A stretch of DNA of 64,000 nt from Malacoraja senta (Eukaryota), in assembly GCA_038087875.1 (NCBI GenBank), contig CM075979.1, forward strand, positions 9,610,001 through 9,674,000. The letters are read 5' to 3'. Of the stretch, positions 480-64,000 are shown piece after piece. Position 1 is the stretch's first letter; each line of letters starts with the position of its first letter. Both the position numbers and the translations under genes were made by a program. The notes beneath the pieces are model-generated. The model was not told where the DNA came from. It saw only the letters and a program-made list of their open reading frames with translations, and made no database searches.

Positions 480-1040
480 TTAAGGCAGCAGTTTTGGTTG
501 TTATATAAAGTCTTGGTGAGACTGTACCTGAAGTTGTATGTACAGTTTGATCTCCTTATTTAGAAAAAATATTGCGCAAGTGGGAGAGCAGTTAAGATTC
601 ATTAGATTGATTCCTGGGATGGTGGACTTACTATATGATAGAGATTGAGTAGTCTAGGCTTCTGTTCTTGAGACTTTAAAAGATTGAGAAGAGAACTCAC
701 TAAAATAAACACAATTCCTACTTCGCACAAATGGATGTATTCAGGCCATCTCCCATCGTTTAGGAGTCTAGATTCAGGGGACAGTGTCAGAACGATGGTT
801 AGACCATCCAGGACTGATTTGAAAGAAATTTCTTCATGCAGAGAATGGCAAATCTTTGGAAGTCTCTATACCAGTTGTTCTCACATTGAATTCATTCAAG
901 ACAGAAGTTGATCGCTATAGAAATCTTGAATGAATCAGGGGATTTTGTGATAGTGTCGGAATATGGCATTGAGGAAGAATATCAGCAAGAATTGATGAAT
1001 TTGGAAATGGTCTACTCCTGCTTCTATTTCTTATGTTCTG
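480..1040 (+). mobile_element. Old degenerate CR1 ORF2 3' end and tail
   Basis: LYKVLVRLYLKLYVQF resembles the CR1 motif LYKxLVRPHLEYCVQFW. It ends in a CR1-type tail (ctcctgcttctatttcttatgttct). Confidence 0.65.
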
Positions 1041-1484
1041 ATTCAAAATACAGCTGGCTGTAAATATGCAGCTTTTTTTAGTCTTCTTTCACATAATGGA
1101 ATGTATGTTTGCCACCGGGATCTAAGTGCCTTTCTTCATAGGTTCTCGCTGTGGGAAGCGAAGATAACTTTGAATTAATTCAGAGATCAGTGATGACTAT
1201 GCACAGCTTACTCCTGACAGAAAAATACGCAGGCCGTAGTAATATATATTTTATACAATTTTTGTTGTTACCATAATCTTGCATCTCCAATTTATTTTTT
1301 CTGGAAAATAAGTTAAATAACTTAGAAGTAATTAAGGCAGAATGGAAGGTCACAGAGTTTGGGTGGACGGGGGAGGAAAGTGAGAGGGATAGTAAAATAG
1401 TATTTCAAGGGATAAAAATCCATGACTGGATCACTGTCAAAGTAACATTTTTTGTTTTAGTGAGTCTGATTGTTTCACCTACAC

Positions 1485-1632
1485 CAGTGGCTCTCAATCA
1501 ATTTAAATAGTCACACTATCAACTCTCAATGCGTAATGCAGGGCACACACACACAACTTAAAAAATGTTTTTAACAGGATGTCACGTGGGCTGTTGTAGT
1601 ATGCTGGTGGAGTTGTGGGTTGAGAACCACTG
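1485..1632. mobile_element. hAT (Charlie-like) MITE, 148 bp
   Basis: Terminal inverted repeats cagtggctctcaa and ttgagaaccactg. The 8-bp flanks acctacac and atctagac match at 6/8 positions and resemble the NTCTAGAN Charlie target. Confidence 0.7.
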
Positions 1633-2769
1633 ATCTAGACTGACAATCTGATATCCCTTTTCTGTCACTGCCCCAAGACAAATTAAACTATTTCCTAGAA
1701 AAGTGCTCTTATGTGACACTAAACTGGCAATCTGAATCAGAAGACCTGCTATACCTCGACGCAGTGCTCACTCTAAGATTAAATATATCATAGGAAACAC
1801 AAATATATTTAAAAATTCCAGATCCTCTGCTGCGTCCAGTAATGACTATTTAGCTAATGAAACAAATAAGATTGAAACAAATAAAATTGAGTTGGTCATG
1901 TGCGAGATTGAGACACTCGGTTAAATTAAGGAAGTCAGCATTTCATGTATCATTTAGACTGATGACTAATTAATAATGCACAAAATAAAAAGGTTTTGAT
2001 TATTTTCAAGCTGTGGTACAATCATAAAACTTTGATCTGGGAGATCTTGCAGAGACCATCAGGTGGTCCACGTGATTGCAACACTCGTGACTAATTGTTG
2101 GTTTATGATGAGTTTTTATCACTGGAACATGTTTTCCCAAAGGTAAGCACTGCTCCTTTTCAAGATTTGCACAATGAAAAATAGGAGGAATAGGTCCTTC
2201 AATCCTGGTCTATCATTCATTGCAATCATGGTAGATCATCCATCTCAATCTCTGTTACCAATCTTTTTTCATACCCATTCATGCTTTTTGTGTTAAGAAA
2301 TGTAATTGCCTCCTTAAATATAAGCGACATGGCTTCCAGACCCCTTTATGACAGTAAATTATGCGGGTTTGTCAACAGTCCGTGAATTTTTCTTTCCTCT
2401 GCTCACCTCTATGTCTTACCCCATATCCTGAGACTTTAATCCGTCATTCTAGACATCCTAACAAGAAGAAAACTTATCCTTGCATCCAGTCATTAATTTG
2501 CCATATTCAATACTAAACTATTGCATCTGGAAACAAACTTATTAAACTTTTCCTATAGGTAAGCCAGGAGTTCAAAATAGGCACTTTTTACTTTGAGTAC
2601 CCTTTGGTGGCAAACAAATAATATCTGGAGATTCAGGGAACTCCCATTTACGATGACTGATACATGTTTTGAGATTACATTCGGAATTTCAAGTAAACAA
2701 CTTTAAAATCTGCTCATTATAGGTGTAACCAGCAAAGCTGTAAAATAACAGAATCATTAACAATATGAA

Positions 2770-3230
2770 GACATAAGAAAATAAGAGCAGGTTACTCAGC
2801 TATTCTAGCCAAACCCACCATTCAATATGATTATAGCTGTTCTGCCCCAAGGGTCATCTCCCCATCTGTGCCAGTTCCTCATATTAGTCCTTGATTCCCT
2901 AACCTTTCAAAAATGTCAATACTTCCTCTTTACATAACTTCGAGATTTAACCCCCACAAATCTCCAGGAACAGAGATAACCCACATCACTGTTTTAAAAG
3001 ATGCTCCTTAAACTTACAACCATGTCCCCATATTCAAGATTCTATCACCAATGGAGACATCTTGACATCAATCTTCTTATGCCTTGTTAAGATTGTACAT
3101 ATTTCAATAAGGTCACCCGTCATCTTCTAAATTCCAAAAAATTCCAAAAAATTCCCCAAAAAGATCAAAACAATGCACTCATCCCAGGCATTAGCCTGGT
3201 AAATCTTATCAGACTGCCTTCAATGCCACT
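2770..3230 (-). mobile_element. Degenerate CR1 3' end, host of the MITE pair
   Basis: Starts with a reverse-complement CR1 tail (acataagaaaataagagcagg...) and continues into eroded ORF2-like sequence (atcccaggcattagcctggtaaatct). Confidence 0.55.
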
Positions 3231-3232
3231 AA

Positions 3233-4051
3233 AGGGCCCGTCCCACTAACGCGACTGTCTTTGACCTTCAAGCTCGAGGGCACTCACCTGAAAAACCTCG
3301 AGCTGGATAGACTATCAGCGATGAAACCACGAGCCGGATTGACCGTCTGTGCGCGCACACACACATATCGCAAAGGCGGGGGCCAGGGAAAGCGGGGGAG
3401 CGCTGTCTGAAATTCACATCCGCGATGAACAGGAAGGTAAAAGACGGCTGGCACAGTTACGGTAAGGCCTTTAGAGAGCACAGGGGGAGGGGGGAGGGGG
3501 GGAGAGAAGGGGGGGGGGAGAGAAGGGGGGGGGAGAGAAGGGGGGGGGAGAGAAGGGGGGGGAGAGAAGGGGGGGGGAGAGAAGGGGGGTGGGGGGAGAG
3601 AAGGGGAGAGAAGGGGAGAGAAGGAGAGAGAAGGGGTGGAGACAATTTTAAGAAGCCAGAGAACTTTTAATAAAGTTTAGCGGGCATTTAACATTACCGG
3701 TCGGTTTACTTACCTTTTTTTTCTCAACGAGCTTTACCTTTGACTACCTTCAATTGCCTTTGTCTACCTACGATAGCATTACGACTTACTACGACCTACC
3801 TTGACTAAACCTATGAGTAAAAAAAATATCGCTTTTTTCCCATGGCGACCTTATTTTACTCACGGCATTTTTCAGCATGTTAAAAAAAACGCTGCGACCT
3901 ACCTGAGGTCTCGAGTACGCGGGGACTACTCTCGAGCATGAAGGAGAGTTACAAAGACCTCCTAGGACCTCGTGTCGACCATGCTGCGAGTATGAGTCGA
4001 GTCAAACTCTTCTAAACTCGCAAATTAGGTTGCCGCAGTGGGACAGGCCCT
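3233..4051. mobile_element. PIF/Harbinger-like MITE with internal G-rich expansion
   Basis: TIRs agggcccgtcccact and agtgggacaggccct; TAA immediately to the left (3230-3232); no transposase coding. Confidence 0.75.
3482..3640 (+). repeat. Polypurine minisatellite, about (G8-AGAGAA)n, with G-quadruplex/triplex potential
   Basis: Direct reading of the repeated gggggggg-agagaa units. Confidence 0.9.
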
Positions 4052-14139: not shown

Positions 14140-15090
14140 AAATGGTAGATGGGGGCGGAGAAATGGCAGATGGAGGTGGCGAGATGGCAGATGGAGTTTA
14201 ATCCGAGTAAGTATGAGGTATTGCAGTTCGGGAGGTCGAATGTAAGGGGAAAGTATTAAAGATCATTAAAAGCATTGACATGCAGAGGTATCTTGGGGTT
14301 CAAGTCCATAGCTTCCTGAAAGTGACAACATAAGTAGATAGAGTGGTAAAGAAAGTAAATGATATGTTTGCCTTGATCAGTCGAGATATTGAGTATGTCA
14401 GGATGTTGTGATGCAGCTCTATAAGACTAGTTTGGCTACATCTGGAATATTGCGTGCTGTTCTGGTCGCTCTATTACAGGATGAAGAGACTTTGGAGATT
14501 ACAGAAGAGGTTTACTAGAATGCTGCCTGGATTAGGGCATATTAGCTACAAGGAGAGGTTGGACAGACTTGGATTGTTTGTTCTGGAGCATTGGAAGATG
14601 AGGGGAGAACAGATAGATATATATAAATTTACAAGAGCCATAGATAGGGAGACAGTCAGAACATTTTTCTCCAGGGTGAAATGTCAAAGACTAGAGGGCA
14701 TATATTTAAGGTGGAAAGGATAAAGTTTAAAGAAAATGTGTGGAGCATTTTACACAGAGTGGCGGGTGCCTGGGGCATGCTGCCAGGGGTGAAGACAGGT
14801 GATAGGGGCTTTTTAAATAGGCACAAAGTCATGCAGTCTGAAGAAGGGTCTCAACCCGAGACGTCACCCATTCCTTTTCTCCAGAGATGCTGCCTGTCCT
14901 GCTGAGTTACTCCAGCATTTTGTGTCTACCTTCGATTTAAACCAGCATCTGCAGCTCTTTCCTACACATAGGGAATTGAGAGATATGGATCATGTGCAGG
15001 CAGATAAGATTAGTTTATCTTGGCATCATGTTTGGCACAGTCGTGGGCAGATGGGTCTTTTTTTGTGTCATACAATTCTATATTCTACGT
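14140..15090 (+). mobile_element. CR1 LINE 3' fragment, interrupted at about 14837-14968 by a Penelope-terminus repeat
   Basis: ORF 14454..14723 (LQKRFTRMLPGLGHISYKERLDRLGLF) is CR1 ORF2 C-terminus, followed by a CR1/HE1-type tail. A roughly 21-bp unit is triplicated at the 5' junction (about 14139-14198). Confidence 0.85.
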
Positions 15091-15570: not shown

Positions 15571-16198
15571 GTGGTGGGTGAGAAGACTTTTTATGTAGGT
15601 GGGGGCAAGCCCATTGAGGGCTTTGTAGACATGGAGGAGGATCTTGAAGTTTATATGGAACCGCACCGGGAGCCAGTGGAGAGAGGCCAGGATCGGGGTG
15701 ATGTGGTCCCTTTTTCGGGTGCCCGTCAGGAGTCTCGCTGTGGCGTTTTGGACCAGTTGCTGGCGGGACAGGGAAGATTGGCTGATGCCAGTGTAAAGGG
15801 AGTTGCAGTAATCTAGGCGGGAGGAGATGAATGTATGGATGATCTTTTCGAGGTCATCAAACTGGAGGAATTGTTTTATTTTAGCTATCGTCCGAAGCTG
15901 AAAGAAGCTAGCTTTTACCATGGCATTGACTTGGTTGTCAAATTTCAGTGCCGAGTCAAATATCAAGCCAAGGTTTCTTACGTGAGGTTTGGGTAGTGGG
16001 GTAAGGCTTCCAAGGCTGCCTGCTATCATTTTGATTGAGTCCGAGGGGCCGAGAAGGATGACCTCAAACTTACTCTCGTTTAGTTGGAGGAAGTTCTGGG
16101 TCATCCAACACTTTATATCCTCGAGGCAGCGGGTAAGGTTAAACAGATTTGATTGGTTTTTGGGCTTCAGGGGGAGATAGAGTTGTGTATCGTCTGCG
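15571..16198 (-). mobile_element. L2-clade LINE reverse transcriptase C-terminal fragment
   Basis: ORF 15529..16257 contains YADDTQLY, SRLDYCNSL and HITPILASLHWLPV, which are hallmark L2 ORF2 motifs, with no internal stop. Confidence 0.9.
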
Positions 16199-21879: not shown

Positions 21880-22638
21880 ATGGTAGACAAAAATGCTGGA
21901 GAAACATAGCGGGTGAGGCAGCATCTATGGAGCGAAGGAAATAGGCGACGTTTTGGGTAGAGACCCTTCTTCAGATTTATGTGGGGGGGGGGCGGTAAGA
22001 AGAAAGGAAGAGGCGGAGACAGTGGGCTGTGGGAGAGCTGGGAAGGGGAGGGGAAAGAAGGGGAAAGCAGGGACTACCTAAAATTGGAGGTCAATGTTCA
22101 TATCGCTGGGGTGTAAACTACCCAAGCGGAATATGAGGTGCTGCTCCTCCAATTTACGGTAGGCTTCACTCTGGCCATGGAGGAGGCACAGGACAGAAAG
22201 GTCGGATTCGGAATGGGAGGGGCAGTTGAAGTGCTGAGCCACCCGGAGATCAGGTTGGTTATTGCAAACCGAGCGGAGGTGTTGGACGAAGCGATCGCCA
22301 AGCCTACGCTTGGTCTCACCGATGTAGAGCAGCTGACACCTAGAGCAGCGGATGCAACAGATGAGGTTGGATGAGGTGCAGGTGAACCTCTGCCGCACCT
22401 GGGATGACTGCTTGGGTCCTTGGATGGAGTCAAGGGGGGAGGTAAAGCGACAAGTGTAACATTTCCTGTGGTTGCAAGGGAAAGTATTGACCAGGGAGTT
22501 ACGGAGGGAACGGTCTCTGTGGAAGGCCGAAAGGGGAGGAGATGGGAAGATATGGCCAGTGGTGGGATCCCGTTGGAGGTGGGGAAAATGTCGGAGGATT
22601 ATTTCTTGGGCGAAAATGTCGGAGGATGATTTGTTAAA
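21880..22638 (-). mobile_element. 5'-truncated Penelope-like retroelement (GIY-YIG endonuclease region and terminus)
   Basis: ORF 22078..22398 reads CTSSNLICCIRCSRCQLLYIGETKRRLGDRFVQH...EEQHLIFRLGSLHPSDMN. It is flanked by the 9-bp direct repeat ggagtgtta (21871-21879 and 22639-22647). Confidence 0.9.
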
Positions 22639-38188: not shown

Positions 38189-40620
38189 TTCGGTAAGTCC
38201 GACCATGCCGCCATACTACTCATGCCAAAATATAAACAGAGACTGAAACGGGAAGTTCCGGTAAGGAGGGAGGTGACGCGCTGGACCGACCAATCAGAGG
38301 CCTCTCTACAAGATGCTCTTGACACTGCTGATTGGGACATGTTCCGTTGCAGCTCTGATGACATCAACATGTTTACGGAAGCGGTGCTGGGATTCATTGA
38401 GAAAGTCACGAACGACTGTGTCACCAAACCCACTGTCAGAATGTTCCCCAATCAAAAACCGCGGGTGGACAAAAACATTCGTGACGCTCTCAGGACCCGC
38501 ACCGCTGCCTATAACACAGCGCTGGCAACCGGAAACAAGGAGGATTTCAAAGCTGTCTCCCACTACGTCCGCAGAGCAGTAAAGGAGGCAAAACAACGCT
38601 ACGGGAGGAAACTGGAGTTACAGCTACACCAGTCGGACTCTAGGGGGCTATGGCAAAGTCTTCACACAATCACGGACTATAAGCCCAAACCCACATCCAT
38701 CCCAAATCCGAACACCTCCCTCGCGGACGAACTAAACGTCTTTTATGCGCGCTTTGAGAATAACACCCAGGCCCTCGAAGCCCATCACATCTCATCCAGC
38801 AGCGAGGAGGTGACATTCCAGGTGACGGAACATGATGTGAGGCGCACACTCAAGCGGGTGAACCCCAGGAAGGCTACAGGTCCGGATGGGATTACTGGGC
38901 GTGTCCTCAGAACCTGCGCAGACCAACTAGCCCCTGTATTCACAGACATTTTCAATCTCTCCCTCTCCCAGTGTATTATCCCCACCTGTTTTAAATGGTT
39001 CATCATAGTCCCTGTCCCCAAAAAACCCCAACCCAGCTGTTTAAACGACTACCGCCCCATAGCCCTGACCTCCACAGTAATGAAGTGTTTTGAGAAACTC
39101 ATCAAAACTTTCATTACCTCCTCCCTACCCACCACCCTGGATCCACTACAATTTGCATACCGCCCCAATAGATCCACTGACGATGCCATAGCCCACCTAC
39201 TCCACACCACTCTCACCCACCTGGACACCAGGAAAGGGGCTTATGTTAGACTGCTGTTCATAGATTACAGCTCAGCGTTTAACACCATAGACCCCTCAAA
39301 GCTGGCCTCCAAATTGTACAACCTCCACTTGTGCCCATCCCTGAGCAAGTGGATCCACAATTTCCTGACCAGCAGACCATAGGTGGTGCGTGTGGGCCAT
39401 CACATGTCATCCTCCCTCACCCTCAACACTGGGCCCCCCCAGGGCTGTGTGCTGAGCCCTCTGCTGTATTCTCTCTACACCCACGACTGCAAGGCCATCT
39501 CACACTCTAACATCATAGTCAAGTTTGCCGATGACACAGTAGTGGTAGGCCTAATCTCAAACAATGATGAGGCAGCCTACCACTCTGAAATCATCCACCT
39601 GGCAAACTGGTATAGGGAGAATAACCTGGAGCTGAACACCTCCAAGACCAAGGAGCTCATAGTGGACTTCTCCAGGAAGTAGCAGAGGAGCTTTCTCCCC
39701 CTCAGCATAAACGGGGCCCAGGTGGAGAGGGTGGAGAGCTTCAGGTACCTCGGCATCCACATCTCCCAGGACCTGACATGGTCACACCACCTCAGCAGCC
39801 TGGTAAAGAAAGCCAACCAGCGTCTTTACCATCTCAGACGGCTGAGGGACTTCAAGCTCCCCCTCAGGGTGCTCAAGAACTTCTACACCCATACTGTGGA
39901 GAGCATCCTGAGTGGGAGCATCATCACCTGGATGGGGAACACCATCAAGAGGGACCAACTGGCTCTGAGGAGGGTGGTTCGCTCAAAACCACCCTTCCCA
40001 ACCTGCAGGACATCTACACCAAGCGCTGCAGGTCAAGAGCCAGGAGGATTATCCAGGACCACACTCACCCCAACAACAGACTGTTTTCCCTGCTGCCCTC
40101 AGGGAAACGGTACCGGCTGCTCAGGGCCAACACGGAGAGAATTAGGAGGAGTTTCTTTCCCCAGGCCATGAGACTGCTGAACGAGGATGGAGTGTCGCCG
40201 CCCCCCCTCCCCCCCAGCCCCCCAACGCCCAAACCCTCCCCACCCTCCTCACCAGCACCTCACCAGCACCTGCACCCCCGCCCAAACCCCCCGCCCCGCC
40301 TCGCCACCATCAAACACACACACATGGGACTGAACTGGATGGAACATGCTGTCATCACAGGTGTTCCACGGCACTTGTCACTTTGCTTGCAACAGCACTA
40401 CTTGTTATGTGGTATATTTATGGGGTATGTGTCATATGTAGGTATTGTTTTATGTGGGTTATGTGGTATTATGTGTTATATGTGGGTATTGTTTTATGTG
40501 GGTTATGTGTAAGTGGGGAACCATGCACAACTGGACAGGCACTTAAGCATTTCACTACTGGTTATACCGGTATAATTGAGTATGTGACCAATAAACTTGA
40601 ATTGAATAAACTTGAATTGA
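38189..40620 (+). mobile_element. Rex1/Babar-clade LINE, 5'-truncated, with lightly mutated ORF
   Basis: Starts FGKSDHAAILLMPKY (end of the AP endonuclease). RT motifs include GPDGI, NDYRPIALTS, QFAYR, DYSSAFNTI, GPPQGCVLSPLLYSLYTHD and KFADD (39521-39535). In-frame TAG stops lie at 39380 and 39680, a frameshift at about 39985, and the tail ends aataaacttgaattga repeated. Confidence 0.92.
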
Positions 40621-43727: not shown

Positions 43728-44608
43728 GATGATGATACAATCGTTAGTGGTTTTGCAGATAGTGAAGAAGGTTGTGAACAATTGCAGCAGGATCTGGATC
43801 GATTGGCCAGGTGGGTGGAGGAATGGTTGATGGAATTTAATACAGAGAAGTGTGAGGTGTTGCATTTTGGGATGTCGAACAAGGGCAGGACCTACACAGT
43901 AAATGGTAGGCCTCTGGGTAGAGTGGTAGAGCAGAGGGATCTAGTGCATGGTTCCTTGAAGGTCGAGCCACAGGTAGATAAGGTGGTCAAAAAGGCTTTT
44001 GGCACTTTGGCCTTCATCAGTCAGAGAATTGAGTATAGAAGTTGGGAGGTCATGTTGCAGTTGTATAAGATGTTGGTGAGACCGCATTTAGAAGATTGTG
44101 TTCAGTTCTGGGCACCATGTTATAGGAAAGATATTGTCAAGCTTGAAAGGGTTCAGAAATGATTTACGAGGATGTTGCCAGGACTAGAGGGTGTGAGCTA
44201 TAGGGAGAGGTTAAGTAGGCTGGGTCTCTATTCCATGGATCGTAGGATGAGGGGAGATCGTATAGACGTATACAAAATCATGAGAGGAATAGATCGGGTA
44301 GATGCACAGAGTCTTTTACCCAGAGTAGGAGAATCGAGGACCAGAGGACATAGGTTCAAGGTGAAGGGGAAAAGATTTAATAGGAATCCGAGGGGTAACT
44401 TTTTCACACAGAGGGTGGTGGGTGTATGGAACAAGCTGCCAGAGGAGGTTGTTGAGGCTGGGACTATCCCATTGTTTAAGAAACAGTTGGGCAGGTACAT
44501 GGATCAAGTGTAGGCAAGTGGGACTAGGGTAGCTGGGACATTGTTGGCCGGTGTGGGCAAGTTGGGCCGAAGGGCCTGTTTCCACAATGTATCACTCTAT
44601 GACTCTAT
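43728..44608 (+). mobile_element. Relatively young 5'-truncated CR1 (HER1-like) LINE
   Basis: ORFs 43782..44162 and 44172..44513 are CR1 ORF2 C-terminus (QQDLDRL...FNTEKCEVLHFG...LVRPHLEDCVQFW...FFTQRVVGVWNKLP). The tail gggccgaagggcctgtttcc...actctatgactctatg resembles the SINE tail. Confidence 0.92.
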
Positions 44609-46295: not shown

Positions 46296-46658
46296 AGGGC
46301 CTGTCTCACTTACGCGACCTCTACGGGCGACTGCCGGCACCCGTCATAGGTCACCGAAGTTTTCAACATGTTGAAAATTCAGCGAAGACCAGAAAGACGC
46401 TACGACTCTTTGGAGACCTCTCACGACCATAGGAGACCTCTCACGACCGTACAGGCGACCCCTGGCGACATGTTGCGGGTGACCTCTCACGACCATAGGA
46501 GACCTCTCACGACCATACAGCCTATGGTCGTGAGAAGTCTCCAAAGAGTCGTAGCGTCTTTCTGGTCGCCGCTGAATTTTCAACACGTTGAAAATTTCGG
46601 CGACCTATGACGTGTGCCGCCAGTCGTCTGTAAAGGTCGCATAAGTGGGACAGGCCCT
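46296..46658. mobile_element. Palindromic PIF/Harbinger-like MITE, 363 bp
   Basis: TAA target duplication (46293-46295 and 46659-46661). TIRs agggcctgtctcactta and taagtgggacaggccct extend into inverted arms of about 140 bp. Confidence 0.88.
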
Positions 46659-53334: not shown

Positions 53335-53756
53335 CAAAAAGGCTTTTGGCACATTGGCCTTCATTAATCAGAGTATTGAGTATAGAAGTTGGGAGGTCAT
53401 GTTGCAGTTGTAAAGGACGTTGGAGAGACCGCATTTAGAGTATTGTCTTCAGTTCTGGGTACCATGTTATAGGGAAGATATTGTCAAGATTGAAAGGGTT
53501 AAGAGAAGATTTACGAGGATGTTGCCAGGACTAGAGGGTCTGAGTTATCGGGAGAGGTTGAGTAGGCTGTGTCTCTATTCCTTGGAGCGCAGGAGGGTGA
53601 GGGGTAATCTCATAGAGGTGTATAAGATCATAAGAGGAATAGATTGGGTAGATGCACAGTCTCTTGCCCAGAGTAGGGGAATCGAGGATCAGAGGACATA
53701 CTGTAAAGGTGAAAAGGAATAATGTTCAAGGTGAAAAGGAAAAGATTTAATAGGAA
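53335..53756 (+). mobile_element. CR1 (HER1-like) ORF2 fragment, ending at the Helitron junction
   Basis: ORF 53420..53722 (RPHLEYCLQFW...RRFTRMLPGLEGLSYRERL) is highly similar to about 43988-44386. Confidence 0.9.
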
Positions 53757-55064
53757 CTAGACTATGTGGGACCCGTTGGGCCCCTGTCACACGGGAGGCC
53801 TGGTCCCCCAACGCAACCCGTTCCCCAACGCAATATTCCACCACTCACCCGTTCCCCAACGCCACTCCCCAACACAGTATTCCACCACTCACGCCTATCC
53901 TCCTCCCATCAAATCCACCCCTCCCTGTCCTCCTTCTCCCTCTACTCCCCCCCCTCTATCCCACCATGCCGATCACCCCGGACCCCTACCCCCTCCATAC
54001 CCCCCTCCACTCCACTACCTCTCTACCACACTCCCTCCCTCTCTTTTCCCCCTCCCTCCCTCTCTCCCCCGCTCCCTCATCCCTCTCTCCCTTCTCCCCC
54101 TCCCTCCCTCATCCCTCTATCCCTGCCCTCATCCCTCTCCCTCCTCCCTCATCCCACTCTCCCCCCTCACTCCCTCATCCCTCTCTCCCCTCATCCCTCT
54201 CTCCCCTCATCCCTCCCCACTCCCTCCCTCCCCTGTGCTGTGGGCTGGGCTGCGGCGCTCCCTCTCTCCGTGTAATGGTGCGGTGCATTAGGGCCGCTCC
54301 CGGTGTCCGCGGCCACAGGCAGGAGCCGCTGGAGCGCTGCCCTTCACGGAGCCGGGCTCGCTGTGCCGGGGGCTGGGTGAGGGTGGCGGGCGGCGGGCGG
54401 CCAAGCCAGAGCTGCCCGCAGAGCAGGAAGCGGAGGCTGTGCTGCAGGATGGCGGCGGCCGGGCAGCCCCCGAGGCGCTGGTACACCTTGACCCAGGCCC
54501 CGGGCTTGGGCACGACTCCAGCCCTCAGCTCGGCCTCCGCCTGGGCTCCAGTCCAGGCCCCGACTTCATCTCCGGGCTCGTCCGTGAACCCGGACCCAGG
54601 CTCGTTCTTGGTTCCTGCCTAGGCCCAGTCCCCGGGCTCATCCTTGGCTCCAGTTCGGGCCCAGTCACCAGGCTCAGCCTGCGGCGCCACCCTCCCCACC
54701 AGATACTGCGCAGCCGTAGCTCCTCGGGCGGTGGCGCCACTCTTTCATGGCGACCTCCAGACGATTGACAGCGGACGCGGCCAATCAGTGCGGCGACGCC
54801 CCTTCCTGACTGACAGGAGAGGAGACCAATCTGCATGGCGGTGAAGAAAAGCAATCTGCGCATACACGTTTTTTTACTATTTTTAAACCTTAATAACTTT
54901 TACAATATACCATCGATCGGAACAAAATTTGTAGCACTCGCAGCACAGGAGAATGGTGAGTAAGCTGGCGAAAAATCATAGCGCTATCTCGTACTGTTTT
55001 TGCACAAATAGAAAAACCACGCAAACCAGAAGAGCACAAGATCAGAGTTTTATTTATGTATAGA
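53757..55064 (-). mobile_element. Non-autonomous Helitron (rolling-circle transposon), 1308 bp, with GC-rich internal cargo
   Basis: On the minus strand it begins A|TCTATAC and ends CTAG|T with no TSD. A GC-rich hairpin GGGGCCC-AAC-GGGTCCC (53768-53784) ends 11 nt before the 3' terminus. All canonical Helitron terminal hallmarks are present. Confidence 0.8.
53930..54235 (+). repeat. CT-rich low-complexity tract, approximately (CCCTCATCCCTCT)n, inside the Helitron
   Basis: Direct reading; it generates the spurious Pro/Ser/Leu-rich ORFs. Confidence 0.85.
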
Positions 55065-55573
55065 TATTTTTCAAGGTACTTTATTTGAACAATTTTGTCC
55101 AAATAAGTATTTCAACAGAGGAAATACCAAAAGTATTATATGTTTCTCACAGATTAAGATAAAATCTCACAAAATATGACAGCTTTCCAGCAACCAACCA
55201 GTAATTAATTCTGCACAACCCTGCGTTAGAACATAGGGCAATACAGGAGAGAAACTGGCCCTTCAGCCCACAATGTCCTTGTCAAACATGATTTAAAGAT
55301 AGACTAATCACATCTGCTTGCACGTGACCCGTATCCCAGAATACTCTACATATCCATGTGGCTATCTAAAAGCCTCTTAAGCCTTTTATATCTGCCTCCA
55401 CTACCACTTCTGGCAGTCCCGCACATCTCCTTTAAACGTGACCGTCTCATCTTTAACCTTTCAGTACTGATTCCACTATACACCTAAGGTACAAAACCTG
55501 CCTTATAATATGCATAATTGTACCATCTTGGTAATTCATCTTCTAATAAAGACTGGCTCGTTATTAGAAAATA

Positions 55574-62333: not shown

Positions 62334-64000
62334 TAGAGTCATAGAGTGATACAGTGTGGCAAAACAGGCCCTTCGGCCCAACTCGCCCATACCAGTCAAC
62401 AATGTCCCAGCTACACTAGTCACACTTGCCTGCGCTTGGTCCATATTCCTCCAAACCTGACCTATCCATGTACCTGTCTAAATGTTTCTTAAACGATGGG
62501 CTAGTCCCAGCCTCAACTAACTCTGCTGGCAGCTTGTTCCATACACCCACCACCCTTTCCTATTAAATCTTTTCCCCGTCGCCTTGAACCTATGTCCTCT
62601 TGTCCTCGATTCCCCTACTCTGGGCAAAAGACTCTGTGAATCTACCCGATCTATTCCTCTCATGATTTTGTATACCTCTAATAAGGTCTCCCCTCATCCT
62701 CATGTGATCAATGGAATAGAGACCCAGCCGACTCAACCTCTCCCTATAGCTCACACCCTCTAATCCTGGCAACATCCTCGTAAGTTTTTTCTGAACCCTT
62801 TCAAGCTTGACAATATCTTTCCAAAACGGTGCCCAGAACTGAACACAATATTCTAAATGCAGTCTCACCAACGTCTTATACAACTGCACCATGACCACCC
62901 AACTTCTATACTCAATAATCTAACTGAAAAGCCTTTTTGACCACCTTAACGACCTGCGACTCGAGCTTCAAGGAGCCATGGACCTGTACTCCTAGATCCC
63001 TCTGCTCTACAACATTACCCAGAGGCCTACCATTTACGGTGTAGGTCCTGCCCTAGTTCGACATCCCAAAATGCAACACCTCACACTTTTCTGTATTAAA
63101 TTTCATCAACCATTCCTCTGTCCACTTGGTCAATCGATCCAGATCCTGCTGCAATCTTTCACAACCATCTTCACTATCTGCAAAACCACTAACTTTTGTA
63201 TCATCAGCAAACTTGCTAATCTTGCCCTGTATGTTCTCATCCAAATCATTGATGTAGATGACAAACAGTAACGGGCCAGCACTGAACCCTGAGGCACCAC
63301 GAGTCACAGGCCTCCAGTCCGAGAAGCAACCTTCCACCATCACCCTCTGCTACCTTCCATTGAGCCAATTTGCTATCCATTCAGCTATCTCTCCTTGAAT
63401 CCCATGCGATCTAACCTTCCAGAGCAGCCTCATGCGGAACCTTGTCGAACGCCTCACTGATGTCCATGTACACAACATCTACAGCTCTGCCCTTATCAAC
63501 CTTTTTGGTCACGTCTTCAAAAAAATCACGACACGACCTCCCATGTACAAAACCATGCTGACTATCCCTAATCAGCCCTTGCCCATCTAAATGGCTGTAC
63601 AACCTATCGCTCAGAATATTCTCCAGTACCTTCCAACTACATATTTTTAAGCTCACCGGCCTATAGTTTCCAGCATTTTCCCTGCAGCCCTTCTTGAAAA
63701 GAGGCACAATATTTGCCACCCTCCAGTCTTTCGGCACCTTTCCTGTATTTAAGGACGACTCGTAAAATTCAAACAGGGCTGCCGCAATTTCTTCTCTAGT
63801 TTCCCGCTATGTCCTCGGATATATCTGATCAGGCCCTGGAGATTTGTCTACCTTCAAACACGACAGTACCTTCAGTACTTCTTCGACAGTAACCCTGACT
63901 GTTCTCAAGACACTTCCAGTGACTGCTCCAATGTCCTCCGTCTTACTACGGTAAATACAGAGGAGAAATACTCATTTAGGACCTTACCCATCTCCTGTGG
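62334..64000 (-). mobile_element. CR1 (HER1-like) LINE, 3' 1.7 kb, continuing beyond the right edge; abuts an older plus-strand CR1 relic (about 61800-62330)
   Basis: ORFs 63411..63737 (PKDWRVANIVPLFKKG...NYRPVSL...SQHGF...AFDKVPH), 63053..63343 (GPLLFVIYINDLD...SKFADDTK) and 62590..62898; reverse-complement tail at 62334-62380. Confidence 0.93.

What the first reader, a model, noticed from the sequence alone, without database searches (positions are those of the whole stretch)
54235..54865. Captured CpG-island promoter or first-exon-like cargo inside the Helitron
Seen: about 630 bp of very GC- and CpG-rich sequence in an otherwise AT-rich, CpG-poor window. It has two CCAAT boxes (54781-54785, 54826-54830), GC boxes, an ETS-like CAGGAAG (54424-54430) and a YY1-like GATGGCGGC overlapping a plus-strand ATG GCG GCG GCC start (54449). 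On the minus strand a Kozak-like gccATG at 54748 opens, with one frameshift and one TAG, a GC3-rich frame: MKSGATARGATAAQYLVGRVAPQAEPGD...AEAELRAGVVPKPGAWVKVYQRLGGCPAAAILQHSLRFLLCGQLW. I cannot name the source gene or resolve the orientation. Inference: a housekeeping-type promoter/5' exon was transduced by rolling-circle transposition. Placed among PAX6 enhancers, it could act as an ectopic promoter, enhancer decoy or alternative ELP4 start. This is the best candidate here for an undescribed system (Helitron-mediated promoter shuffling in elasmobranchs).
Basis: partly seen in the sequence, partly recalled or inferred. Interest (0 to 1): 0.8.

Follow-up and report, generated by a model that had tools for sequence, protein, structure and literature searches.

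The report
Helitron carrying a SAC3D1 exon fragment
The CpG-rich block is a decayed piece of the first coding exon of the host gene SAC3D1, picked up by a rolling-circle transposon (Helitron) that has spread through skate genomes; it looks like a promoter mainly because its source exon is very GC-rich, so it is a new example of a well-known process.

Summary

The block lies inside a 1308-bp non-autonomous Helitron on the minus strand (55064 to 53757).

The source gene is now named. Window 54775-54346 derives from coding exon 1 of SAC3D1, roughly codons 26-250 (HMMER E 7e-14; tblastn E 3e-31 against skate SAC3D1; core DNA block 92-93% identical). The fragment lacks the parent's start codon and promoter.
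- The "Kozak ATG" at 54748 is the parent's Val36 codon.
- The ETS, YY1 and GC-box motifs are the antisense strand of conserved codons.
- The fragment has several indels, several frameshifts and a copy-specific TAG.

The two CCAAT boxes belong to a separate module that is shared by Helitron copies carrying other cargo. They are not SAC3D1's promoter.

All parts are multi-copy in at least two related species. About a third of the well-supported copy-specific changes are CpG decay. No RNA read supports transcription of this locus.

Verdict: an ordinary decayed passenger and a new member of a known kind (Helitron gene capture, as in bats and maize). I found no paper on it in skates. This scan had already noted SAC3D1-carrying Helitrons elsewhere in this genome.

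The parts
53757..55064 (-). Complete non-autonomous Helitron copy (1308 bp), inserted between host A and T
   Evidence: 5' TCTATACATAAATA..., 3' ...GGGGCCCAACGGGTCCCACATAGTCTAG, host flanks A| and |T. Depth drops from about 10^4 to single-copy exactly at 55064-55066, with heterogeneous loose ends there.
54871..55064 (-). Helitron 5' terminal region (LTS), AT-rich
   Evidence: 71% identical over 184 nt to a Helitron copy in Rhinoraja (L002 13967-14150), score 66 against a shuffle maximum of 32. Summed contig depth is 10^4 to 2.7x10^4 against 3.25 for the single-copy flank in run X1.
54778..54870 (-). CCAAT-box (NF-Y-like YGATTGGYC) module with two boxes 45 bp apart; shared by the Helitron family, not derived from SAC3D1
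   Evidence: 42/52 identical to Rhinoraja Helitron copy L002 14499-14552, including both boxes (score 35; shuffles mean 16.5, max 26). There is no match to the SAC3D1 5' region. Depth of 54778-54845 is about 900-3700, against about 230-340 for the SAC3D1 core.
54346..54775 (-). Captured fragment of SAC3D1 coding exon 1 (about codons 26-250 of 444-462), decayed
   Evidence: phmmer against 1.8 billion proteins gave SAC3D1-like of Rhinoraja at E 6.9e-14 and SAC3D1 of Mobula at 2.6e-4. tblastn with Amblyraja and Leucoraja SAC3D1 gave E 3e-31. DNA 54493-54346 matches L001 1077-1217 at 88.5% including a 7-bp insertion, or 92-93% without it. The fragment is colinear with the parent from RLEV onward, with deletions.
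54748..54750 (-). Apparent start codon; corresponds to the parent's Val36 codon (GTG AAG GAG TGG in the parent, ATG AAA GAG TGG here)
   Evidence: Alignments; protein P0001 reads ...AAVKEWRRP.
54618..54620 (-). In-frame TAG, specific to this copy
   Evidence: At 54620 all laid contigs of X1 (112.3 of 112.3) and most of X4 read C, which gives TGG.
54595..54680 (-). 36-bp tandem repeat encoding the skate-specific EPGD(E/W).. repeats of SAC3D1
   Evidence: TRF reports period 36, 2.4 copies. The same repeats occur in P0001, P0006 and P0015 and are absent from the SAC3D1 of sawfish, manta and sharks.
54235..54345 (-). GC-rich tail of unknown origin; it stands where the last 115 bp of parental exon 1 and its splice donor would be
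   Evidence: No significant match in L002, L003 or L004. Multi-copy, with depth 41-137 against 3.25 for single copy.
53900..54233 (-). G-rich (C-rich on the plus strand) microsatellite; same type and orientation as the start of SAC3D1 intron 1 in skates
   Evidence: TRF. blastn hits fall only on the plus strand of intron 1 in L002, L003 and L004. This is low-complexity sequence, so it is only suggestive.
53757..53899 (-). Helitron 3' terminal region: 17-bp repeats, hairpin GGGGCCC-AAC-GGGTCCC (53784-53768), 11 nt, then CTAG
   Evidence: Sequence and TRF. The hairpin is short and its fold energy is not above shuffles. There is a weak match to a Rhinoraja Helitron 3' end, 20/23.

Best explanation
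The CpG-rich block is the passenger of a non-autonomous Helitron lying on the minus strand. In element orientation the order is:
1. A family-wide 5' end.
2. A family-wide module of CCAAT (NF-Y-type) boxes.
3. A 430-bp fragment of the first coding exon of the host gene SAC3D1 (SAC3/GANP family), starting about codon 26.
4. A 111-bp tail of unknown origin.
5. A G-rich microsatellite like the one that opens SAC3D1 intron 1.
6. The 3' hairpin and CTAG end.

The fragment was captured in the skate lineage, because it carries the skate-specific EPGDEVGAW repeats. It was then amplified with the element to tens of copies per genome.

The island-like composition is inherited from the source exon (GC 0.76, CpG o/e 0.8) rather than maintained by promoter function. 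This copy has lost reading frame, start codon and the parental splice donor, and it shows CpG-to-TpG/CpA decay. At this locus it is most likely inert DNA. Identity and structure are shown; inertness is inferred.
For: Helitron:
- Termini, A|T insertion site and hairpin.
- Sharp multi-copy boundary at 55064-55066 in two species.
- 5' end homologous to Helitron copies in Rhinoraja.

SAC3D1 origin:
- phmmer gave E 6.9e-14 to a protein that NCBI names SAC3 domain-containing protein 1-like, carrying PF03399.
- tblastn gave E 3e-31.
- The core DNA block is 92-93% identical to exon 1 in three skate genomes.
- The fragment is colinear from RLEV to EPGS.

Not the parent's promoter:
- No homology to the parent's upstream DNA or first 25 codons.
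- The CCAAT module matches a Helitron copy with a different cargo and is about 10 times more abundant than the SAC3D1 core.

Amplified with the element:
- Contigs of two species run across the position of the 48-bp deletion without a gap, so the deletion is a family trait (records 3, 17, 19-21).
- Cargo depth is 13-100 times single copy.

Decay:
- 10 of the 31 well-supported differences from the family majority restore a CpG.
- The TAG is specific to this copy.

No transcription seen:
- No RNA read was 99% or more alike, every laid read ran on into unlike sequence, and no read fell on the unique flank.
Against: - The window's own genome could not be searched, so the parental locus was examined in three other skates rather than in the species of the window.
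- Copy numbers come from summed contig depths and are rough.
- The RNA runs are from other species and only 6% of the raw-read run was read, so absence of transcription is weakly supported.
- CpG o/e is still 0.68-0.93 in the parts, and in the best-aligned 148-bp block CpG number is unchanged (15 vs 15). Partial protection from methylation is therefore not excluded.
- The 111-bp tail is unexplained.
- No empty site was recovered.
Confidence: 0.85

Rival explanations
1. One reading: the Helitron transduced a housekeeping promoter with its first exon, and here it acts as an ectopic promoter, enhancer decoy or alternative ELP4 start. A weaker version also fits: the CCAAT-box module is an older captured host promoter that the family keeps upstream of varying cargo exons and that still fires in some copies.
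For: - Two well-formed NF-Y-type boxes (ACTGATTGGCC, CAGATTGGTC) sit 45 bp apart, 30-80 bp upstream of the pseudo-exon.
- The same kind of box array stands upstream of a mini first exon with ATG and GTGAGT donor in a Rhinoraja copy.
- A 200-nt RNA-library contig of organism B carries the Helitron form of the SAC3D1 fragment, with the 48-bp deletion (record 9).
- Bat HelibatN3 shows that such a design can drive chimeric transcripts (PMC4778049).
Against: - The SAC3D1 piece lacks its own promoter and ATG.
- The other 'promoter motifs' are antisense coding sequence.
- This copy lacks the parental splice donor.
- CpG decay is present.
- There are no RNA reads from this locus or its flank.
- The source of the CCAAT module is unknown.
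- ELP4 orientation in the window was not determined.
Confidence: 0.1
2. A genuine host CpG island: an unannotated promoter or first exon of a local gene that only happens to lie between Helitron-like ends.
For: It meets CpG-island criteria over about 600 bp.
Against: Every part of it is multi-copy in two species. It is homologous to an exon of a gene located elsewhere. It is bounded by canonical Helitron ends.
Confidence: 0.02
3. A processed (retroposed) SAC3D1 pseudogene, or a segmental copy, that landed inside a pre-existing Helitron at this locus and so is not true Helitron cargo.
For: The fragment is coding sequence only and is decayed.
Against: - The same deleted form occurs in tens of copies in two species.
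- There is no poly(A), and exon 2 is absent.
- It is followed by an intron-1-like satellite in the parental orientation.
- Other notes of this scan report SAC3D1 pieces in other Helitron copies of the genome (unchecked by me).
Confidence: 0.03

Closest known systems
HelibatN3 and related bat Helitrons that captured the NUBPL promoter, six codons and a splice donor (Pritham and Feschotte 2007; Thomas et al. 2014, PMC4224331; Grabundzija et al. 2016, PMC4778049)
   Same: A non-autonomous Helitron carrying a host-gene 5' fragment between its terminal sequences, amplified to many copies and often sitting in introns. A promoter-like module lies upstream of an exon piece.
   Different: Here the identified cargo is an internal part of a long coding first exon, without the parent's promoter, ATG or donor. 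The promoter-like CCAAT module has no identified host source. No chimeric transcript is shown. The host is a skate, not a bat.
Maize and other plant gene-fragment-carrying Helitrons (e.g. PMC2575219, PMC4528327)
   Same: Capture of exon fragments, pseudo-exons that decay, and family members with differing cargo.
   Different: Plant elements often chain fragments of several genes. Here one gene fragment is identified, plus one unexplained tail.
SAC3D1 (SHD1), a SAC3/GANP-domain protein (Pfam PF03399), the parental gene
   Same: 92-93% DNA identity in the core block. The colinear protein match includes the conserved QRLGG..AAILEHSLRFLLCGQLWLGRPPP stretch and the skate-specific EPGDEVGAW repeats.
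   Different: Codons 1-25, the DRLRSVRQD motif (48-bp deletion), the end of exon 1 and all of exon 2 are missing. The frame is broken, so it cannot encode the protein.

Membership tests
Helitron (rolling-circle transposon), non-autonomous copy | 5' end TC, 3' end CTRR | tested here: met
   Minus strand reads 5' TCTATAC... and ends ...GTCTAG 3'.
Helitron (rolling-circle transposon), non-autonomous copy | Insertion between host A and T, with no target-site duplication and no terminal inverted repeats | tested here: met
   Flanks are ...AAAAATA| and |TTCCTAT on the element strand. No empty site could be recovered.
Helitron (rolling-circle transposon), non-autonomous copy | Short GC-rich hairpin 10-12 nt before the 3' end | tested here: met
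   GGGGCCC-AAC-GGGTCCC at 53784-53768, 11 nt before the end. The 7-bp stem includes one G-T pair. The fold energy of the 54-nt end is not better than shuffles, so the feature is weak on its own.
Helitron (rolling-circle transposon), non-autonomous copy | Many copies sharing the ends, with the boundary exactly at the terminus | tested here: met
   Depth of about 10^4 stops at 55064-55066, with heterogeneous flanks, in two species. The 5' end is homologous to copies in Rhinoraja.
Helitron (rolling-circle transposon), non-autonomous copy | An autonomous partner encoding Rep/helicase in the genome | not tested
   The genome of the window could not be searched with these tools.
Helitron-captured host gene fragment | Cargo homologous to a host gene whose own locus lacks Helitron ends | tested here: met
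   SAC3D1 exon 1 in Amblyraja (L003) and Leucoraja (L004) has no Helitron 5' end within 8 kb. In Rhinoraja (L002) unrelated copies lie downstream of the gene. This was tested in relatives, not in the window's own genome.
Helitron-captured promoter plus first exon (HelibatN3 type) | Cargo includes the parent's promoter and transcription and translation start | tested here: not met
   Homology starts about codon 26. There is no match to the parent's ATG or to 150-480 bp upstream of it in three species.
Helitron-captured promoter plus first exon (HelibatN3 type) | Cargo keeps the exon's splice donor, so that it can trap downstream exons | tested here: not met
   Parental exon 1's last 115 bp and its donor (CTGG|GTAGGT or CTGG|GTATGT) are replaced by an unrelated 111-bp tail in this copy. 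Loose ends show that other copies do keep ..VYSQGWAEYEN.
Helitron-captured promoter plus first exon (HelibatN3 type) | Transcripts that start in the element | tested here: inconclusive
   No read came from this locus. The family is present in RNA libraries of two other species, but strand-symmetrically and only partly matching.
Functional vertebrate CpG-island promoter | CpG o/e above 0.6 and GC above 0.55 over more than 200 bp | tested here: met
   GC 0.70 and CpG o/e 0.71 over 631 bp.
Functional vertebrate CpG-island promoter | Single-copy, with CpGs protected from methylation decay | tested here: not met
   It is multi-copy. 10 of 31 copy-specific changes are CpG to TpG or CpA. The composition is explained by the source exon.
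Functional vertebrate CpG-island promoter | Unmethylated, open, H3K4me3-marked, with a TSS | not testable with these tools
   No methylation, ATAC, ChIP or CAGE data were available.

The most novel reading that the evidence does not exclude
The CCAAT-box array is a mobile NF-Y-dependent promoter cassette that this skate Helitron family keeps just inside its 5' end, upstream of interchangeable captured first-exon pieces (SAC3D1 here; ALG13, HTRA2 and others in other copies according to unchecked notes of this scan). The family would then be a genome-wide promoter-plus-exon-trap system in cartilaginous fishes, and some copies, possibly this one in the PAX6/ELP4 domain, would start chimeric or antisense transcripts.
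Probability: 0.12. Interest if true: 0.6.

Novelty: new member of a known kind. Interest (0 to 1): 0.33.

Why it matters
It also shows that a convincing-looking "CpG-island promoter" can be a GC-rich coding exon read on the wrong strand.

At family level it documents Helitron gene capture in skates, which I did not find in the searched literature. The capture has a datable marker, the skate-specific SAC3D1 repeat, and the family carries a shared CCAAT-box module that deserves a promoter test.

For PAX6/ELP4 regulation there is at present no evidence of any effect.

Tried and rejected
- Pfam scan of four ORF pieces: no family.
- ESM Atlas look-alikes: nothing above 0.65.
- The search for homologous proteins with the 112-aa ORF: no hit, because of the tool's length window.
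- First HMMER job lost on the remote machine and re-run.
- HTRA2 and ALG13, suggested as cargo by other notes of the scan: by eye (recalled human sequences) I saw no resemblance in any of the translated frames, and neither was tested with a tool; the HMMER hits were SAC3D1 only.
- Tail 54345-54235 against the three parental loci: no significant match.
- Empty-site test using paralogous LINE copies at 44320-44470 and 62471-62625: the LINE does not resume beyond the Helitron, so the test is inconclusive.
- Within-window search for further copies of the element: none.
- ORFs in the Rhinoraja Helitron copies: uninformative.
- ELP4 exons and orientation in the window: not determined, because no ELP4 protein could be fetched with the tools.
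- Literature on Helitrons in skates or sharks: only passing mentions.

Full report
**Observation.** The stretch 54235-54865 is strongly GC- and CpG-rich.
- It has GC 0.696, 54 CpGs and CpG o/e 0.71. The 64-kb window as a whole has 0.395 and 0.37.
- It is the only place where consecutive 200-bp windows (54201-54800) meet CpG-island criteria.
- The minus-strand frame with GC3 up to 0.97 exists.

**Setting.** The block lies inside a 1308-bp element on the minus strand, running from 55064 to 53757.
- The element begins TCTATACATAAATA and ends GGGGCCC-AAC-GGGTCCC-ACATAGTCTAG. It sits between a host A and a host T. This is the canonical Helitron layout.
- Laying contigs of two DNA-like runs on 54200-55200 gave summed depths of 10^4 to 2.7x10^4 over 54880-55066. 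Depth fell to the single-copy level (3.25 in X1, 46.4 in X4) exactly at 55064-55066, with heterogeneous loose ends there.
- The X1 contig over the unique flank has no differences, so organism A is probably the window's species. The X4 contig has 4 differences in 161 letters, so organism C is a close relative.
- Both flank contigs reach 27-28 nt into the element. That suggests a shared orthologous insertion, but it is below the tool's 31-nt bridging rule.
- The 3' hairpin is short, and on energy alone it is not better than shuffles.

**Source of the cargo.**
- Pfam and the ESM Atlas gave nothing.
- An exhaustive phmmer search with the 109-aa open stretch (54618-54292, minus strand) against 1.8 billion representatives returned three hits. 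The best was a 444-aa protein at E 6.9e-14. Another, of 309 aa, was 77% identical over 31 residues.
- NCBI names these two "SAC3 domain-containing protein 1(-like)" of Rhinoraja longicauda and Mobula birostris, and they carry PF03399.
- tblastn of Amblyraja radiata and Leucoraja erinacea SAC3D1 against the element gave E about 3e-31.
- I fetched the genes from three skate assemblies (L001/L002, L003, L004). Each has two coding exons. Exon 1 is 855-1004 bp long, with GC 0.76 and CpG o/e 0.80-0.83.

**How the cargo matches the parent gene.**
- DNA 54493-54346 aligns to exon 1 at 88.5% identity counting a 7-bp insertion, or 92-93% without it. The three parental sequences are 96-99% alike among themselves.
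- Upstream, the element stays colinear with the parent back to the codons RLEV at about 54775, with several deletions.
- Relative to the parent, a 48-bp deletion removes the FVHDFVMDRLRSVRQD codons.
- The reading moves through three frames.
- The TAG at 54618-54620 is peculiar to this copy. Essentially all family contigs read C at 54620, which gives TGG.
- Contigs of both species cross the site of the 48-bp deletion without a gap (records 3, 17, 19-21). The deletion therefore predates amplification.
- The cargo carries the EPGD(E/W)VGAW-type tandem repeats. These occur in Rhinoraja, Amblyraja and Leucoraja SAC3D1 but not in sawfish, manta or shark SAC3D1. Capture therefore took place within the skate lineage.

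**What the "promoter features" are.**
- The ATG at 54748 aligns with the parent's Val36 codon: GTG AAG GAG TGG in the parent, ATG AAA GAG TGG here.
- CAGGAAG (54424) is the antisense strand of CGC TTC CTG (RFL).
- GATGGCGGC with the plus-strand ATG GCG GCG GCC (54448) is the antisense strand of GCC GCC GCC ATC (AAAI).
- The GGGCGG boxes at 54388 and 54395 are the antisense strand of the GRPPP codons.
- These motifs, other than the GGGCGG at 54726, fall in the core block (54493-54346) that aligns with the parental exons of three species.
- The parent's own ATG, its first 25 codons and its upstream DNA have no counterpart in the element.

**The CCAAT boxes.** The two boxes (54781 and 54826; ATTGG on the element strand, 45 bp apart) sit in a separate module.
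- The module matches a Helitron copy found by chance downstream of the Rhinoraja SAC3D1-like gene. It is 42/52 identical to L002 14499-14552, including both boxes, with score 35 against a shuffle mean of 16.5 and maximum of 26.
- It does not match the SAC3D1 5' region.
- That Rhinoraja copy, and a second one nearby, carry arrays of four to five YGATTGGYY boxes. In the first copy the array is followed by a different mini exon, ATG ACA GCC CGG AGC CCG G|GTGAGT.
- The module's depth (about 900-3700 in X1) is roughly ten times that of the SAC3D1 core (about 230-340). Some of this excess may come from tandem units within copies.
- I conclude that the module belongs to the Helitron family and not to SAC3D1. 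Its ultimate origin is unknown. That it is a promoter, captured earlier or the element's own, is inference from its NF-Y-like form.

**Downstream of the SAC3D1 piece.**
- Homology ends at 54346 (..EPGS). The last 115 bp of parental exon 1 and its splice donor are absent.
- A 111-bp GC-rich tail (54345-54235) stands in their place. It has no match in the three parental loci, yet it is itself present at about 13-40 times single copy.
- Loose ends at 54514 in DNA and RNA contigs read ..YSQGWAEYEN, the parental exon-1 end. Other family members therefore keep more of the exon.
- The G-rich microsatellite that follows (54233-53900) resembles the satellite that opens SAC3D1 intron 1 in all three skates, always in the same orientation.
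- That would fit capture of exon 1 plus the intron start. However, the sequence is low-complexity, and a similar tract exists at 3482-3642 of the window.

**State of this copy.**
- Of the 31 best-supported positions where the family majority differs from the window, 10 are TG or CA here and CG in the majority. By my rough estimate that is several-fold more than CpG positions would contribute without hypermutability. It points to germline methylation for at least part of the copy's history.
- The table showed only the best-supported 40 of 112 differences, so this sample is biased towards high depth.
- In the best-conserved 148-bp block the CpG count is unchanged, so decay is moderate.
- Most family contigs are 90-95% alike to this copy.

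**Transcription.**
- In a poly(A) RNA-seq run of organism C (6% of the run read), 69 reads were laid. None was 99% or more alike, and all matched only in part and ran on into unlike sequence. Both strands were about equally represented, and no read fell on the unique flank.
- RNA-library contigs of organism B include a 200-nt contig with the Helitron form of the fragment (record 9). Family copies therefore appear in RNA libraries, but this says nothing about this locus.
- The relation to ELP4 and PAX6 was not tested. I could not map ELP4 exons with the tools at hand.

**Comparison and novelty.**
- The closest known case is the bat HelibatN3 family, which captured the NUBPL promoter, six codons and a splice donor and drives chimeric transcripts (PMC4778049; PMC4224331).
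- This element shares the overall design: a non-autonomous Helitron with a 5' gene fragment and a promoter-like module.
- This copy fails two defining points of the promoter-plus-first-exon type, namely the parent's promoter and start, and the splice donor.
- Helitron gene capture as such is well known. I found no paper describing it in skates or sharks.
- Other notes of this scan had already reported SAC3D1-carrying Helitrons on other DNA of the same genome. I reached SAC3D1 independently through the HMMER search and verified it on this copy.

**Verdict.** It is not a captured promoter or start of that gene, and it is not a new kind of system.

Noticed in passing
L002:13967-14812, L002:~15600-15990, L002:16001 onward (Rhinoraja longicauda, just downstream of the SAC3D1-like gene): Two to three copies of the same Helitron family sit within 2.5 kb downstream of the parental gene. 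The first has an internal 3'-end-like hairpin (CACAATGGGGGCCCAAACGGGTCC, about 14227-14252). This is followed by a CCAAT-box array and a mini first exon with ATG and GTGAGT donor, a layout that would fit capture by read-through of the 3' end. No such copies lie within 8 kb of the gene in Amblyraja or Leucoraja.
   Followed up: partly
L001:700-1030, L003 and L004 exon 1 (proteins P0001, P0006, P0015): Skate SAC3D1 carries a lineage-specific tandem repeat (EPGDEVGAW.. or VVPEPRVGAQATAEPGAR) whose unit and number differ between Rhinoraja, Amblyraja (446 aa) and Leucoraja (462 aa). The repeat is absent from sawfish, manta and shark orthologues.
   Followed up: partly
window 53420-53756: A LINE 3' fragment (ORF ..RFTRMLPGLEGLSYRERLSRL..) stops exactly at the Helitron 3' end. 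In other copies (44320-44470, 62471-62625) the LINE continues TCCGAGGGGTAACTTTTTCAC, which is not found beyond the Helitron at 55065. The insertion may have come with a deletion, or the LINE was already truncated.
   Followed up: partly
window 53806-53899: Near the Helitron 3' end, a unit of about 45 bp is duplicated, each copy starting GTGAGTGGTGGAATA (strong splice-donor-like GTGAGT at 53848 and 53892 on the minus strand). It is interleaved with 17-bp CCCCAACGCAACCCGTT repeats. Its origin is unknown.
   Followed up: no
window 3201-3500, 22101-22400, 38701-38900, 46301-46500: Other short windows meet CpG-island criteria (CpG o/e 0.76-1.12, the highest at 46301). They were not examined. A C-rich satellite like 53900-54233 lies at 3482-3642, next to the first of them.
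   Followed up: no
window 54514 (loose ends in runs X1 and X20): Some family copies, including contigs from an RNA library of organism B, join the repeat region directly to ..YSQGWAEYEN, the end of SAC3D1 exon 1. This is a second structural variant of the SAC3D1 cargo that keeps the exon end which this copy lacks.
   Followed up: no
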